Source of the DNA: Octopus sinensis
Lineage: Eukaryota
NCBI RefSeq assembly: GCF_006345805.1
Contig: NC_043002.1
Location: 79,732,001 to 79,796,000 of the forward strand
Direction of reading: 5' to 3'
Length of the DNA stretch: 64,000 nt
Shown here: in pieces, positions 41,241 to 44,905 of the stretch
Layout of the letters: each line of letters starts with the position of its first letter
How positions within the stretch are numbered: the stretch's first letter is position 1
Position numbers and translations under genes: made by a program
Notes under the pieces: generated by a model
Seen by the model: the letters and a program-made list of their open reading frames with translations, nothing else
What the model was told of the DNA's origin: nothing
The model's database searches: none

Positions 41241-41413
41241 ATATTGTATAGAGGGCATTATTACACATAAATGCCTCACACTAGGAGGGACAAGTCATTA
41301 CTACCAAAAATTATACTAATCATACCCAAATGATTAGTATAATTTTTGGTAGTAATGCTTTTGTCCCTCCTAGTGTGAGGCATTTATGTGTAATAATGCC
41401 CTCTATACAATAT
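41241..41413. repeat. Fold-back palindrome at the 5' end of the 473-bp array
   Basis: 41241-41322 is the reverse complement of 41331-41413, with loop tacccaaa. Confidence 0.95.
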
Positions 41414-41700
41414 AGATATAATTAATTTGTTCAAAAGAAAAAAATTATTTTCGGAAACTTTTCTTTTATGAGGTTTTCACGCTAGCTACCCGATAATTTC
41501 TTGTTAAGATCCCTTATTAAGAGATTATCCTTAATTGTTAAACTTATTCGGAAATACTTTTCATTACCCGACATGCAGTTCGTAAAAAGCCCGCCATTTA
41601 CCGGATATATGATTTATAAACATTCATGTGCTTGGCCGGAGTGAGCAGTTGTCTGTTCGTCTCCGCTACGTAAGGTTGGTAGTTTATTTATGATGTATCA

Positions 41701-41769
41701 GAATCAGTCTGCTGACGAGATCATTAGACGCAAGTTGTATGTGAAATCACGGTGATACAGAACAAATTC
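41701..41769 (+). ncRNA. Hammerhead ribozyme, array unit 1 (indel-variant copy)
   Basis: CUGACGA at 41712 and GAAA at 41743; small indels relative to consensus. Confidence 0.6.
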
Positions 41770-42172
41770 ATTTTTAAATGTCTTGCTTTGAAAAACTGCA
41801 TTTGGGTATGATTAGTATAATTTTGGTAGTAATGACTTGTCCCTCCTAGTGTGAGGCATTATGTGTAATAATGCCCTCTATACAATATAGATATAATTAA
41901 TTTGTTCAAAGAAAAAAATTATTTTCGGATTCTTTTCTTTTATGAGGTTTTCACGCTAGCTACCCGATAATTTCTTGTTAAGATCCCTTATTAAGAGATT
42001 ATCCTTAATTGTTAAACTTATTCCGAATACTTTTCATTACCGACATGCAGTTCGTAAAAAGCCCGCCATTTACCGATATATGATTTATAAACATTCCATG
42101 TGCTTGGCCGGAGTGAGCAGTTGTCTGTTCGTCTCCGCTACGTAAGGTGGTAGTTTATTTATGATGTATTCA

Positions 42173-42241
42173 GAATCAGTTCTGCTGACGATCATTAGAC
42201 GCAAGTTGTATGTGAAATCACGGTGATACAGAACATAATTC
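42173..42241 (+). ncRNA. Hammerhead ribozyme, array unit 2 (consensus)
   Basis: GAAU-ca-GUUCUG-CUGACGA-uCAUuaGAC(GCAA)GUUguAUGu-GAAA-UCAC(g)GUGA-UA-CAGAAC-aua-AUUC; predicted cleavage after 42228. Confidence 0.75.
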
Positions 42242-42650
42242 ATTTTTAAATGTCTTGCTTTGAAAAAACTGCATTTGGGTATGATTAGTATAATTTTTGG
42301 TAGTAATGACTTTGTCCTCCTAGTGTGAGGCATTTATGTGTAATAATGCCCTCTATACAATATAGATATAATTAATGTGTTCAAAAGAAAAAAATTATTT
42401 TCGGATTCTTTTCTTTTATGAGGTTTCACGCTAGCTACCCGATAATTTCTTGTTAAGATCCCTTATTAAGAGATTATCCTTAATTGTTAAACTTATTCCG
42501 AAATACTTTTCATTACCCGACATGCAGTTCGTAAAAAGCCCGCCATTTACCGGATATATGATTTATAACATTCCATGTGCTTGGCCGGAGTGAGCAGTTG
42601 TCTGTTCGTCTCCGCTACGTAAGGTTGGTAGTTTATTTATGATGTATTCA

Positions 42651-42717
42651 GAATCAGTTCGCTGACGATCATTAGACGCAAGTTGTATGTGAAATCACGG
42701 TGATACAGAAATAATTC
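42651..42717 (+). ncRNA. Hammerhead ribozyme, array unit 3
   Basis: Same fold with two 1-nt deletions in stem I. Confidence 0.6.
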
Positions 42718-43121
42718 ATTTTTAAATGTCTTGCTTTGAAAACTGCATTTGGGTATGATTAGTATAATTTTTGGTAGTAATGACTTTGTCCCTCCTAGTG
42801 TGAGGCATTTATGTGTAATAATGCCCTCTATACAATATAGATAAATAATTTGTTCAAAAGAAAAAATTATTTTCGGATTCTTTTCTTTTATGAGGTTTTC
42901 ACGCTAGCTAACGATAAATTTCTTGTTAAGATCCCTTATTAAGAGATTATCCTAATTGTTAAACTTATTCCGAAATACTTTTCATTACCGACATGCAGTT
43001 CGTAAAAAGCCCGCCATTTACCGGATATATGATTTATAAACATCCATGTGCTTGGCCGGAGTGAGCAGTTGTCTGTTCGTCTCCGCTACGTAAGGTTGGT
43101 AGTTTATTTATGATGTATTCA

Positions 43122-43189
43122 GAATCAGTTCTGCTGACGATCATTAGACGCAAGTTGTAATGAAATCACGGTGATACAGAACATAATTC
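43122..43189 (+). ncRNA. Hammerhead ribozyme, array unit 4
   Basis: Same fold; the 3' side of stem II reads guuguaau; predicted cleavage after 43176. Confidence 0.65.
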
Positions 43190-43591
43190 CTTTTTAAATG
43201 TCTTGCTTTGAAAAACTGCATTTGGGTATGATTAGTATAATTTTGGTAGTAATGACTTTGTCCCTCCTAGTGTGAGGCATTTATGTGTAATAATGCCCTC
43301 TATACAATATATATAATAATTTGTTCAAGAAAAAAAATTATTTTCGGATTCTTTTTTTATGAGTTTTCACGCTAGCTACCCGATAATTTCTTGTTAAGAT
43401 CCCTTATTAAGAGATTATCCTTAATTGTTAAACTTATTCCGAAATACTTTTCATTACCCGACATGCAGTTCGTAAAAAGCCCGCATTTACCGGATATATG
43501 ATTTATAAACATTCCATGTGCTTGGCCGGAGTGAGCAGTTGTCTGTTCGTCTCCGCTACGTAAGGTTGGTAGTTTATTTATGATGTATTCA

Positions 43592-43660
43592 GAATCAGTT
43601 CTGCTGACGATCATTAGACGCAAGTTGTATGTGAAATCACGGTGATACAGAACATAATTC
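43592..43660 (+). ncRNA. Hammerhead ribozyme, array unit 5 (consensus)
   Basis: Identical to unit 2; predicted cleavage after 43647. Confidence 0.75.
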
Positions 43661-44063
43661 ATTTTTAAATGTCTTGCTTTGAAAAACTGCATTTGGGTAT
43701 GATTAGTATAATTTTGGTAGTAATGACTTTGTCCCTCCTAGTGTGAGGCATTTATGTGTAATAATGCCCTCTATACTATAGATATAATTAATTTGTTCAA
43801 AAGAAAAAATTATTTTCGGATTCTTTTCTTTTATGAGGTTTTCACGCTAGCTACCCGATAATCTTGTTAAGATCCCTTATTAAGAGATTATCCTTAATTG
43901 TTAAACTTATTCCGAAATACTTTTCATTACCCGACATGCAGTTCGTAAAAAGCCCGCCATTTACCGGATATATGATTTATAAACATTCCAGTGCTTGGCG
44001 GAGTGAGCAGTTGTCTGTTCGTCTCCGCTACGTAAGGTTGGTAGTTTATTTATGATGTATTCA

Positions 44064-44132
44064 GAATCAGTTCTGCTGACGATCATTAGACGCAAGTTGT
44101 ATGTGAAATCACGGTGATACAGAACATAATTC
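44064..44132 (+). ncRNA. Hammerhead ribozyme, array unit 6 (consensus)
   Basis: Identical to unit 2; predicted cleavage after 44119. Confidence 0.75.
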
Positions 44133-44536
44133 ATTTTAAATGTCTTGCTTTGAAAAACTGCATTTGGGTATGATTAGTATAATTTTTGGTAGTAATGACT
44201 TTGTCCCTCCTATGTGAGGCATTTATGTGTAATAATGCCCTCTATACAATATAGATATAATTAATTGTTCAAAAGAAAAAAATTATTTTCGGATTCTTTT
44301 CTTTATGAGGTTTCACGCTAGCTACCCGATAATTTCTTGTTAAGATCCCTTATTAAGAGATTATCCTTAATTGTTAAACTTATTCCGAAATACTTTTCAT
44401 TACCCGACATGCAGTTCGTAAAAGCCCGCCATTTACCGGATATATGATTTATAAACATTCCATGTGCTTGGCCGGAGTGAGCAGTTGTCTGTTCGTCTCC
44501 GCTACGTAAGGTGGTAGTTTATTTATGATGTATTCA

Positions 44537-44605
44537 GAATCAGTTCTGCTGACGATCATTAGACGCAAGTTGTATGTGAAATCACGGTGATACAGAACAT
44601 AATTC
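44537..44605 (+). ncRNA. Hammerhead ribozyme, array unit 7 (consensus)
   Basis: Identical to unit 2; predicted cleavage after 44592. Confidence 0.75.
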
Positions 44606-44851
44606 ATTTTAAATGTCTTGCTTGAAAAACTGCATTTGGTATGATTAGTATAATTTTTGGTAGTAATGACTTTGTCCCTCCTAGTGTGAGGCATTTATGT
44701 GTAATAATGCCCTCTATACAATATAGATATAATTAATTTGTTCAAAAGAAAAAAATTATTTCGGATTCTTTTCTTTTTAGAGGTTTTCACGCTAGCTACC
44801 CGATAATTTCTTGTTAAGATCCTTATTAAGAGATTATCCTTAATTGTTAAA

Positions 44852-44905
<54 letters not shown>

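What the first reader, a model, noticed from the sequence alone, without database searches (positions are those of the whole stretch)
41331..44853. Candidate cephalopod retrozyme: 473-bp tandem array with one hammerhead ribozyme per unit
Seen in sequence: about 7.4 head-to-tail copies of a non-coding ~473-bp unit. Each of the 7 full units folds as a type I HHR. Stem I is GUUCUG/CAGAAC, extended by GAAU/AUUC across a CA x AUA internal loop. The core is CUGACGA...GAAA, stem II is capped by a GCAA tetraloop, stem III is the near-palindrome AUCAC-G-GUGAU, and the cleavage triplet is AUA. Predicted cuts at 42228, 43176, 43647, 44119 and 44592 give monomers of ~471-473 nt. Established: tandem HHR repeats of this kind (newt satellite 2, Schistosoma Sm-alpha, Dolichopoda pDo500, metazoan non-LTR retrozymes) are transcribed, self-cleave to monomers, circularise and are thought to be mobilised by PLE reverse transcriptases. 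Palindromic stem III favours dimeric double-hammerhead cleavage between adjacent units. Inference: this is a young octopus retrozyme family producing ~473-nt circRNA. I am not aware of one described from cephalopods, but that needs a literature check. Caveat: the 10.1-11.1 pair is a non-canonical U.U.
Basis: partly seen in the sequence, partly recalled or inferred. Interest (0 to 1): 0.95.

Follow-up and report, generated by a model that had tools for sequence, protein, structure and literature searches.

The report
Tandem hammerhead-ribozyme retrozyme insertion
A 3.5-kb array of ~479-bp non-coding repeats, each carrying a slightly atypical hammerhead self-cleaving RNA motif, looks like one retrotransposed copy of a "retrozyme", a class of circular-RNA mobile elements already known in many animals, so it is a new member of a known kind, not a new kind.

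Summary
The tandem array is real: 41330-44851, 7 full units plus one 212-bp partial unit. The hammerhead (HHR) motif is there exactly as described, but it is intact in only 4 of the 7 units as assembled. It needs a non-canonical U.U at 10.1-11.1. Rfam's Hammerhead_1 model scores it well below threshold (14.4 bits against a gathering score of 34).

Independent evidence still favours a non-LTR retrozyme:
- My relaxed HHR descriptor is expected 0.01 times per window by chance.
- A second, sequence-unrelated element at 38.6-39.05 kb carries an HHR-like motif with the same architecture.
- The plus-strand monomer folds as a circle far better than shuffles (z about -6; minus strand about -3.4).
- The insertion is bracketed by a 15-bp direct repeat, starts with an inverted 5' fragment, and sits in a (TA)n tract. 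These are the footprints of Penelope-like-element integration.

Most differences between units are homopolymer deletions, which looks like long-read assembly noise. The true monomer is probably about 479 nt.

I could not verify the host taxon (octopus), transcription, cleavage or circularisation. No cephalopod retrozyme turned up in the searchable literature, but mollusc retrozymes (mussel) and a U.U-bearing HHR (axolotl) are published.

Verdict: probable retrozyme, a new member of a known kind, of moderate interest.

The parts
41230..41244 (.). Left copy of the candidate target-site duplication, ACATATAATATATAT
   Evidence: The identical 15-mer lies at both junctions. It occurs only 5 times in the 64-kb window.
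41245..41329 (-). Inverted fragment of the unit (reverse complement of about consensus -9..88), head-to-head with the first direct unit
   Evidence: BLAST of the consensus: 41323-41237 minus strand, 97.7% over 88 nt. Inverted-repeat arms 41237-41293/41361-41417 and 41296-41323/41330-41357.
41330..44851 (+). Direct tandem array: 7 full units plus a partial unit (consensus 1-212). The consensus is 479 nt with 34% GC.
   Evidence: TRF; unit split and consensus; BLAST at 97.5-98.3% to the consensus; GC content.
41712..41757 (+). HHR core of unit 1 (C3 to A17). Defective as assembled: GA inserted after A9 and stem I shortened.
   Evidence: Per-unit alignment.
42185..42228 (+). HHR core of unit 2, intact. 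Predicted cut after 42228.
   Evidence: Exact 44-nt core; descriptor hit.
42662..42705 (+). HHR core of unit 3. The core is exact, but helix I has lost U2.2 and C1.6.
   Evidence: not found by the descriptor.
43134..43176 (+). HHR core of unit 4. The helix II 3' strand is altered (TGT to AT), so C10.2 faces A.
   Evidence: not found by the descriptor.
43604..43647 (+). HHR core of unit 5, intact. The full motif with both helix I segments spans 43592-43660. Predicted cut between 43647 and 43648.
44076..44119 (+). HHR core of unit 6, intact. Predicted cut after 44119.
44549..44592 (+). HHR core of unit 7, intact. Predicted cut after 44592.
44852..44866 (.). Right copy of the candidate target-site duplication, ACATATAATATATAT
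44854..45029 (.). (AT)n microsatellite, the target tract into which the element inserted
   Evidence: TRF; sequence.
45409..45603 (+). Old, diverged fragment of the same family (consensus 3-217, 67% identity). It lacks the HHR half and also ends at a (TA)n tract.
   Evidence: Local alignment; BLAST.
38644..39050 (.). Second, sequence-unrelated HHR-like element: a head-to-head inverted dimer with about 180-nt arms, next to (TA)n tracts. There is an HHR-like motif on + at about 38838-38910 (core 38851-38897) and a shorter, weaker copy on - (38827-38798).
   Evidence: Descriptor hits; inverted repeats; fold and architecture; no other copy in the window.

Best explanation
The locus is a single retrotransposed insertion of a non-autonomous, non-coding element of the metazoan non-LTR retrozyme type.

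Proposed mechanism, with each step marked as shown or inferred:
1. The array is transcribed on the + strand as a multimer (inferred).
2. Each unit carries a type I hammerhead. Helix I has a 6-bp proximal stem, an internal loop and a 4-bp distal stem. The core is CUGACGA...GAAA. Helix II has a U.U at 10.1-11.1, then 3 bp, a 2x2 internal loop, and 3 bp capped by GCAA. Helix III is 4 bp with a CGG loop and is nearly palindromic. The cleavage triplet is AUA. The motif is shown; activity is inferred.
3. The ribozyme cuts after A17, either alone or, because helix III can pair with the copy in the next unit as a 10-bp duplex with one G.G mismatch, as a double hammerhead. [quoted passage not shown]
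4. A host RtcB-type tRNA ligase circularises them into a compact, about 67% base-paired circle. The fold is predicted and is significantly better than shuffles; ligation is inferred from published retrozymes.
5. A reverse transcriptase/GIY-YIG endonuclease supplied in trans by a Penelope-like element nicks a (TA)n target. It primes on A/U-rich stretches of the RNA and copies the endless template for several turns. The footprints are shown: the 15-bp duplication, the inverted 5' fragment, the TA target, 7.4 near-identical units, and array ends that do not coincide with the ribozyme cut site. The enzyme itself is inferred, and none is encoded in the window.
For: - Array and consensus.
- All conserved core positions are present (C3 U4 G5 A6 N7 G8 A9, G12 A13 A14, A15.1-U16.1, H17=A) with three helices in type I order.
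- The relaxed descriptor is expected 0.01 times per window, and two independent loci are seen.
- The second element at 38851 shares the unusual architecture: a 4-bp distal plus 6-bp proximal helix I, a mismatched 10.1-11.1 (A.A), 3 bp, an internal loop, a distal hairpin, and a near-palindromic helix III. It shares no sequence similarity.
- Circular MFE of the + strand monomer: z = -6.3 for the consensus, -5.8 and -6.1 for two real cut-to-cut units, with 67% paired. The minus strand gives -3.2 to -3.6, and eight genomic controls give -3.1 to +2.3. Helix I forms in the global MFE.
- The 15-bp direct repeat lies exactly at both junctions.
- There is an inverted fragment at the 5' junction and (AT)n at the 3' junction. 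PLE insertions are described as partial tandems with an inverted 5'-truncated copy at the 5' end, variable TSDs and (TA)n targets (PMC8557442).
- The published retrozyme definition fits: type I HHR, short tandem repeats, low GC, no LTR/PBS/PPT, TSDs longer than 4 bp, and highly self-paired circRNAs (PMC7229834). Published consensus lengths are 51-972 bp, and most families have at most 7 units (bioRxiv 10.64898/2026.07.22.740005).
- A U.U at the base of helix II occurs in axolotl HHR_Amex2, which cleaves at 22% per hour as a monomer and much better as a dimer.
- The helix III self-duplex is predicted at -13.9 kcal/mol.
Against: - Rfam Hammerhead_1 scores only 14.4 bits (gathering 34) and does not align helices II and III. 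There is no hammerhead hit at all in the wider scans.
- The G10.1-C11.1 pair, described as highly conserved (PMC4209133), is replaced by U.U.
- Helix II is long and interrupted, so the canonical loop 1-loop 2 contact cannot be assumed.
- The local 80-nt fold is not better than shuffles, and the MFE is not the HHR fold.
- Three of the 7 units are defective as assembled.
- There are no other full copies to test covariation. All intact HHRs here are identical, so conservation is uninformative.
- No PLE reverse transcriptase is in the window.
- The TSD lies in low-complexity TA-rich sequence.
- The array ends (consensus 1 and 212) recur in the old fragment at 45409-45603. A purely circular template does not obviously predict this.
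- There are no expression data.
Confidence: 0.75

Rival explanations
1. It is a dead or decaying retrozyme copy. The family is or was a retrozyme, but this hammerhead variant (U.U at 10.1-11.1, interrupted helix II) cleaves poorly or not at all, so the array now behaves as an ordinary satellite and makes no circRNA.
For: The G10.1-C11.1 pair is missing. The Rfam score is sub-threshold. Three of 7 units have indels inside the motif. The axolotl U.U variant is a weak monomeric cleaver.
Against: The four intact motifs are identical, and most differences between units look like assembly noise rather than decay. The strand-specific RNA structure signal is still strong. The U.U variant in axolotl is active, especially as a dimer. 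A second family with the same non-canonical feature suggests a tolerated lineage variant.
Confidence: 0.15
2. It is an ordinary tandem satellite generated by unequal exchange or replication slippage, and the hammerhead-like motif is there by chance.
For: There is no Rfam support. The local fold is not significant. There is only one full-length locus in the window.
Against: The descriptor is expected 0.01 times per window, and two independent loci are found. The 15-bp duplication, the inverted 5' fragment and the TA target point to a retrotransposition event. The monomer structure gives z about -6 on the HHR strand only.
Confidence: 0.05
3. The array is a fragment of an autonomous Penelope-like element, made of tandem pseudo-LTRs whose coding part has been lost or lies elsewhere. 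It is not a separate non-autonomous family.
For: PLE HHRs lie in pLTRs, and PLEs form partial tandems with inverted 5' copies. Retrozymes are reported to be sister to PLE pLTRs. Helix II is long, as in PLE min-HHRs.
Against: There is no RT or GIY-YIG remnant in or near the array, and no ORF of 70 aa or more with a Pfam RT hit in the window. There are seven complete identical non-coding units instead of pLTR-ORF-pLTR. Helix I (6 bp plus loop plus closing stem) and a stable helix III resemble canonical retrozyme HHRs, not min-HHRs.
Confidence: 0.05

Closest known systems
Metazoan non-LTR retrozymes (Cervera & de la Pena 2020, PMC7229834), especially the mussel Mytilus galloprovincialis repeats of about 350-390 bp
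   Same: It shares the type I HHR in each unit of a short head-to-tail repeat, low GC (34%), and no coding capacity, LTR, PBS or PPT. The predicted circular monomer is highly self-paired. It comes from an invertebrate-like, microsatellite-rich genome. The mussel HHRs also lack the archetypal loop 1-loop 2 nucleotides.
   Different: The monomer of about 479 nt is above the 170-400 nt range reported there, though it is within the 51-972 bp range of the 2026 preprint. Positions 10.1-11.1 are U.U. Helix II is 9 positions long with an internal loop. There is no sequence similarity to test, and no expression data.
Axolotl retrozyme Rtz_353 with HHR_Amex2
   Same: It has a U.U mismatch at the base of helix II and a helix III more stable than in newt satellite 2. 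The units are tandem and cleave better as dimers.
   Different: The axolotl unit is 350 nt in a vertebrate host, and its helix III is only 2 bp plus a tetraloop. Here helix III is 4-5 bp.
Classical type I HHR satellites: newt satellite 2, Schistosoma Sm-alpha, Dolichopoda pDo500
   Same: They share tandem repeats transcribed into multimers, the type I topology, a 6-bp helix I followed by an internal loop, and a palindromic helix III that allows double-hammerhead cleavage (and my own knowledge).
   Different: Those have G10.1-C11.1, a 4-bp helix II with a loop 2 that contacts loop 1, and a 1-2 bp helix III. Rfam's Hammerhead_1 model is built on such sequences and does not reach threshold here.
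Penelope-like element pLTR hammerheads (min-HHRs; Cervera & de la Pena 2014, PMC4209133)
   Same: They share a long helix II (7-8 bp), an irregularity at the base of helix II, and palindromic helix III positions. The insertion architecture also matches: tandem copies, an inverted 5' copy, a variable TSD and microsatellite targets.
   Different: Min-HHRs have a 4-5 bp helix I without a clear loop 1, almost no helix III, a conserved G10.1-C11.1, and they flank an RT-EN ORF. None of that holds here.

Membership tests
Hammerhead ribozyme, type I | Conserved core: C3 U4 G5 A6 N7 G8 A9 ... G12 A13 A14, the A15.1-U16.1 pair, and H17 (not G) at the cleavage site | tested here: met
   CUGACGA at 43604-10, GAA at 43633-35, A43636 paired with U43646, A17 at 43647. 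The exact core is present in 5 units.
Hammerhead ribozyme, type I | Three helices around the core, with helix I open-ended (type I order) | tested here: met
   Helix I is 6 bp plus 4 bp, helix II is 3 bp plus 3 bp plus GCAA, and helix III is 4 bp plus CGG. It is found by my descriptor in 4 units.
Hammerhead ribozyme, type I | Watson-Crick 10.1-11.1 pair (usually G-C) closing helix II | tested here: not met
   It is U43611 opposite U43632. The strict descriptor gives 0 hits. A published precedent for U.U exists (HHR_Amex2), so this makes it a variant and does not exclude it.
Hammerhead ribozyme, type I | Match to the curated covariance model (Rfam RF00163) at its gathering score | tested here: not met
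   The score is 14.4 bits against 34, and it appears only when 106 nt are searched.
Hammerhead ribozyme, type I | Loop 1-loop 2 tertiary contact nucleotides | tested here: inconclusive
   An internal loop sits 6 bp from the core in helix I, as in canonical type I. Helix II has an internal loop at the canonical loop 2 distance instead of a terminal loop. The mussel retrozyme HHRs also lack the archetypal nucleotides.
Hammerhead ribozyme, type I | Site-specific Mg2+-dependent self-cleavage | not testable with these tools
   This needs in vitro transcription.
Hammerhead ribozyme, type I | Covariation supporting the helices across family members | not testable with these tools
   All intact copies in the window are identical. 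No related sequence was retrievable.
Metazoan non-LTR retrozyme | Type I HHR inside each unit of a short head-to-tail repeat, from dimers to multimers | tested here: met
   7.4 units with one motif each.
Metazoan non-LTR retrozyme | Non-coding, low GC (<45-50%), no LTR, PBS or PPT | tested here: met
   GC is 34%. The longest ORF is 99 aa without homologues. There are no terminal repeats other than the tandem units.
Metazoan non-LTR retrozyme | Monomer size within the described range | tested here: met
   About 479 nt. This is above the 150-450 bp of PMC7229834 but within the 51-972 bp of the 2026 preprint.
Metazoan non-LTR retrozyme | Target-site duplication longer than 4 bp, when present | tested here: met
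   The 15-bp ACATATAATATATAT lies at 41230-44 and 44852-66. Caveat: the context is TA-rich.
Metazoan non-LTR retrozyme | Monomer RNA predicted to be a stable, highly self-paired circle | tested here: met
   z is -5.8 to -6.3 with 67% paired, strongest on the HHR strand.
Metazoan non-LTR retrozyme | Expressed as linear and circular monomer RNAs | not testable with these tools
   No transcriptome is available here.
Metazoan non-LTR retrozyme | Co-occurrence with HHR-bearing Penelope-like elements in the same genome | not testable with these tools
   Only 64 kb is available, and it holds no RT. The PLE-type insertion footprints are indirect support.
Cephalopod (octopus) origin of the window | Near-identical match of any window sequence to a cephalopod record | tested here: inconclusive
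   The mariner HTH remnant gave a 78% hit in a Logan run and a 67% hit in a soil metagenome. The transposase remnant's best named hit is a crab at 67%. What is shown is an animal genome with 26-40% GC per 2-kb bin, dense in microsatellites and SINE-like repeats.

The most novel reading that the evidence does not exclude
This genome may harbour a lineage-specific hammerhead variant class, shared by at least two unrelated mobile families. Its features are a non-Watson-Crick 10.1-11.1 (U.U or A.A), a canonical-length 4-position basal helix II followed by an internal loop and an extension hairpin, and a 3-5 bp near-palindromic helix III. Standard descriptors and Rfam miss this class. The junctions of this insertion are a TSD, an inverted fragment primed at an A/U-rich site, a 3' end at a second A/U-rich site, and no end at the ribozyme cut. 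They would be a direct footprint of twin-primed, PLE-type reverse transcription of an endless (circular) retrozyme RNA at (TA)n targets.
Probability: 0.3. Interest if true: 0.55.

Novelty: new member of a known kind. Interest (0 to 1): 0.4.

Why it matters
If it is confirmed in a cephalopod, it would extend non-LTR retrozymes and their abundant circRNAs to a clade where the searchable literature reports none.

It would add a second natural hammerhead lineage that tolerates a mismatched 10.1-11.1 pair. That matters for how ribozyme descriptors and covariance models are written, because this copy is invisible to Rfam thresholds.

The clean junctions (a 15-bp duplication, an inverted 5' fragment, a TA target) give unusually explicit structural support for the proposal that Penelope-like elements mobilise retrozymes.

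None of this changes the established picture of the class.

Tried and rejected
- Rfam at gathering thresholds on the whole window found nothing. Permissive scans found only spurious hairpin and miRNA-like hits caused by the inverted junctions. These include a near-threshold 'WsnRNA46' hit of 62.8 bits against 65.3 at 41243-41416, which is just the head-to-head junction.
- Thermodynamic folding of the 80-nt motif was not significant, as is usual for hammerheads.
- I tried to reach other copies or species through called ORFs. The 99-aa antisense consensus ORF has no homologue.
- A structure-aware exact pattern scan gave 0 hits in JGI metagenome contigs and 0 in IMG/VR viral contigs. I did not scan genome contigs because that collection holds only bacteria and archaea.
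- Host identification through TE remnants was inconclusive.
- A search for a PLE RT or any gene in the window found none. The large ORFs are microsatellite translations, and only a Mos1-type HTH_48 remnant was found. There are no tRNAs.
- A looser descriptor (helices of 4, 2 and 2 bp or more) added no hammerhead beyond the mirrored copy at 38827-38798, so I did not build a covariance model.
- I checked whether the old fragment at 45409-45603 preserves the predicted hairpins by inspecting one of them by eye. It looks decayed and uninformative. No tool call was made for this.
- Literature string searches for the ribozyme sequence gave 0 papers.

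
Full report
**1. The observation**

Tandem Repeats Finder reports a single array at 41330-44851 with period 472, 7.4 copies, 96% matches and 3% indels. Using the conserved start of the unit as an anchor, I split it into seven full units of 471-478 bp plus a partial unit at 44641-44853. 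The majority consensus is 479 nt with 34% GC.

There are 78 differences from the consensus. Of these, 48 are single-base deletions, 6 are insertions and 24 are nominal substitutions, many of which are misaligned indels. Thirty-five of the 48 deletions lie next to the same base. This is the error profile of an unpolished long-read assembly rather than divergence. The units are probably near-identical, and the real monomer is probably nearer 479 nt than 473 nt.

The array has no coding potential. The longest consensus ORF is 99 aa on the antisense strand, and it has no homologue in the 5.8-billion-protein collection.

**2. The hammerhead motif**

In unit 5:

| Part | Coordinates |
|---|---|
| Distal helix I, GAAU | 43592-95 |
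| Loop, CA | 43596-97 |
| Proximal helix I, GUUCUG | 43598-603 |
| Core, CUGACGA | 43604-10 |
| U10.1 | 43611 |
| CAU/AUG pairs | 43612-14 / 43629-31 |
| 2x2 internal loop (UA x GU) | 43615-16 / 43627-28 |
| GAC/GUU | 43617-19 / 43624-26 |
| GCAA loop | 43620-23 |
| U11.1 | 43632 |
| G12 A13 A14 | 43633-35 |
| Helix III, AUCA-CGG-UGAU | 43636-46 |
| A17 | 43647 |
| CAGAAC | 43648-53 |
| AUA | 43654-56 |
| AUUC | 43657-60 |

The exact 44-nt core occurs in five units. A per-unit alignment shows that only units 2, 5, 6 and 7 are intact. Unit 1 has a GA insertion after A9 and a shortened helix I. Unit 3 has lost U2.2 and C1.6. Unit 4 has an altered helix II 3' strand. So 'each of the 7 units' is an overstatement, although the defects may be assembly errors.

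**3. Is it more than chance?**

The curated models do not help:
- Rfam finds nothing at gathering thresholds in the window.
- It finds no hammerhead at E<=10 in the 4.1-kb region.
- On a 106-nt stretch, Hammerhead_1 scores only 14.4 bits (gathering 34, E 0.53), aligning just helix I and CUGACGA.
- The 80-nt motif does not fold better than shuffles (z +0.47). The hammerhead fold (-10.5 kcal/mol) is within 1.2 kcal/mol of the MFE.

I therefore wrote an explicit type I descriptor. It requires helix I of at least 5 bp, CUGANGA, helix II of at least 3 bp, GAAA, helix III of at least 3 bp closed by A15.1-U16.1, and H17.
- The strict form, with 10.1-11.1 paired, finds nothing.
- Allowing a mismatch at 10.1-11.1 recovers the four intact units and one further site at 38851-38897.
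- In 300 dinucleotide-preserving shuffles of the whole window, both strands, the relaxed descriptor hit three times, or about 0.01 per window.

**4. A second, independent hammerhead-like element**

The extra hit lies in the right arm of a head-to-head inverted dimer. The arms are 38644-38823 and 38872-39050, 94% complementary, with (TA)n tracts nearby on both sides. A shorter copy of the motif lies on the minus strand of the left arm.

It has no sequence similarity to the 479-nt unit and no other copy in the window. Yet its architecture is the same:
- a 4-bp distal helix I (CUGA/UCAG);
- a 3x3 internal loop;
- a 6-bp proximal helix I (AUUCAA/UUGAAU);
- the core CUGAUGA;
- an A.A at 10.1-11.1, then 3 bp, an A-rich internal loop and a 4-bp hairpin;
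- GAAA, a near-palindromic helix III (AUCC-A-GGAU), and the cleavage triplet AUC.

Rfam does not recognise it either. Two unrelated elements sharing the same non-canonical details argue for a real, lineage-specific hammerhead variant over chance.

**5. RNA structure of the whole monomer**

I folded the monomer as a circle starting at the predicted cut.

| Sequence | MFE (kcal/mol) | Shuffle mean ± sd | z | Paired |
|---|---|---|---|---|
| Consensus, + strand | -124.5 | -90.9 ± 5.3 | -6.3 | 67% |
| Consensus, - strand | -97.1 | -78.2 ± 5.8 | -3.2 | 56% |
| Eight 479-nt genomic controls | | | -3.1 to +2.3 | |

Two real cut-to-cut units (43648-44119 and 44120-44592) give z = -5.8 and -6.1 on the + strand, and -3.4 and -3.6 on the - strand. 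Both helix I segments form in the global MFE. This strand-specific signal on the hammerhead strand matches the 'highly self-paired' circles described for retrozymes (PMC7229834; PMC7761336).

**6. Junctions**

- The upstream junction carries an inverted copy of about consensus -9..88 (41237/45-41329, 97.7% identity), head-to-head with unit 1.
- The downstream end is a partial unit stopping at consensus 212, directly followed by (AT)n at 44854-45029.
- The 15-mer ACATATAATATATAT lies immediately outside both ends, at 41230-44 and 44852-66. It occurs only five times in the window.

I read this as a target-site duplication that brackets the inverted fragment and the array as one insertion into a TA-rich tract, the tail of a SINE-like repeat.

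PLE insertions are described in just these terms: partial tandems, an inverted 5'-truncated copy at the 5' end, TSDs of variable length, and (TA)n targets (PMC8557442). The inverted fragment is at the 5' end of the hammerhead-sense strand, as that description predicts.

Neither array end coincides with the ribozyme cut, which falls after consensus position 428. The ends lie in A/U-rich stretches. With 7.4 near-identical units, this fits target-primed copying of an endless or multimeric template, with priming from both nicked target strands in a twin-priming-like manner. That last step is my inference.

**7. An unexplained detail**

About 560 bp downstream, 45409-45603 is an old fragment, 67% identical, covering consensus 3-217. 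That is the same span as the terminal partial unit, and it also ends at (TA)n.

Recurrent 3' ends could mean a preferred priming site. A recurrent 5' end at consensus about 1 is not predicted by a circular template. It might instead indicate a modular unit, with a 1-217 module plus an HHR module, or a defined transcript start. One locus cannot decide this.

**8. Comparison with what is known**

The features that define metazoan non-LTR retrozymes are: a type I HHR, short tandem repeats, low GC, no LTR/PBS/PPT, TSDs longer than 4 bp, self-paired circRNAs, and co-occurrence with PLEs (PMC7229834). Those testable here are all met. Size fits the wider range of 51-972 bp in the 2026 preprint, which also notes that 75% of families have at most seven units and that retrozymes are sister to PLE pLTRs.

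The U.U caveat has a direct precedent. Axolotl HHR_Amex2 has a U.U at the base of helix II, cleaves at 22% in one hour as a monomer, and cleaves much better as a dimer.

Canonical metazoan HHRs have a 6-bp helix I, a 4-bp helix II and a 1-2 bp palindromic helix III. PLE min-HHRs have a 7-8 bp helix II and an irregular base of helix II (PMC4209133). The present motif combines a canonical helix I with a long, interrupted helix II and an unusually stable helix III of 4 bp. The near-palindrome could also form a 10-bp intermolecular duplex with one G.G mismatch, predicted at -13.9 kcal/mol.

Mussel retrozyme HHRs likewise lack the archetypal loop-loop nucleotides and cleave more slowly than the coral retrozyme HHR.

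**9. What could not be established**

- **Host.** A Mos1-type HTH_48 remnant at 10361-10699 shows an animal genome. The best relatives are 78% (a Logan run) and 67% (a soil metagenome). A transposase remnant at 26004-26237 is closest, among named proteins, to a crab protein at 67%.
- **Enzyme.** No PLE RT lies in the window.
- **Related sequences.** None could be fetched, so covariation is untested.
- **Activity.** Transcription, cleavage and circularisation are inferred from the family.

**10. Literature check on novelty**

Searches for retrozyme or hammerhead ribozyme together with octopus or cephalopod returned only incidental mentions. The key retrozyme papers do not mention cephalopods. 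The ribozyme's sequence strings occur in no held paper.

The 2020 study scanned RefSeq invertebrate genomes with RNAmotif and kept hits with recognisable helix I-II tertiary interactions. A motif with U.U at 10.1-11.1 and an interrupted helix II could have been filtered out.

The library does not cover subscription journals, so 'not described' is provisional.

**11. Verdict**

This is most likely one young, PLE-style insertion of a non-LTR retrozyme with a variant type I hammerhead (confidence 0.75). Whether the ribozyme is active is open. It is a new member of a known kind and of moderate interest (0.4). Its main value is in two things: the clean insertion footprints, and a hammerhead variant that standard models miss.

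Noticed in passing
window 38644-39050: A head-to-head inverted dimer with about 180-nt arms, 94% complementary, next to (TA)n tracts. It carries a second hammerhead-like motif (core 38851-38897 on +, and a shorter copy at 38827-38798 on -) with an A.A at 10.1-11.1. The right arm has a 17-nt hairpin in helix II that the left arm lacks. It is unrelated in sequence to the 479-nt unit.
   Followed up: partly
window 45409-45603: An old fragment of the 479-nt family, 67% identical, covering consensus 3-217 only. It has the same end-points as the array's terminal partial unit and also abuts a (TA)n tract. The recurrence of both ends is unexplained.
   Followed up: partly
window 41330-44851: Differences between units are dominated by single-base deletions in homopolymers (48 deletions, 6 insertions, few true substitutions). 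This suggests unpolished long-read assembly noise across the window. Unit length, copy number and the three 'defective' ribozymes should be rechecked on reads.
   Followed up: partly
window 40156-40378, 17119-17345, 21825-22007; also 41045-41219, 49603-49788, 17565-17737, 2459-2638, 55863-55998: There are at least two families of SINE-like interspersed repeats, with copies 67-94% identical, on both strands. The array is inserted in the TA/TATG-rich tail of one copy.
   Followed up: no
window 10361-10699 (+) and 26004-26237 (-): Decayed DNA-transposon remnants. One is a Mos1-type mariner HTH_48 domain (E 5e-8). The other is a transposase C-terminal fragment whose best named relative is a crab (Petrolisthes) protein at 67%.
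   Followed up: partly
window 41243-41416: A near-threshold Rfam hit to 'Wolbachia sRNA 46' (62.8 bits against a gathering score of 65.3) on both strands. It is produced purely by the long hairpin of the inverted junction. It is a false positive, not a bacterial sRNA.
   Followed up: yes
window-wide, e.g. 794-1527, 3090-4013, 4592-4913, 11163-12021, 47124-48073, 61682-62028: Microsatellite density is very high: (TA)n, (TGTA)n and (CTAT)n tracts of 0.3-0.9 kb. No protein-coding gene, tRNA or Rfam family was detected in the 64 kb.
   Followed up: no
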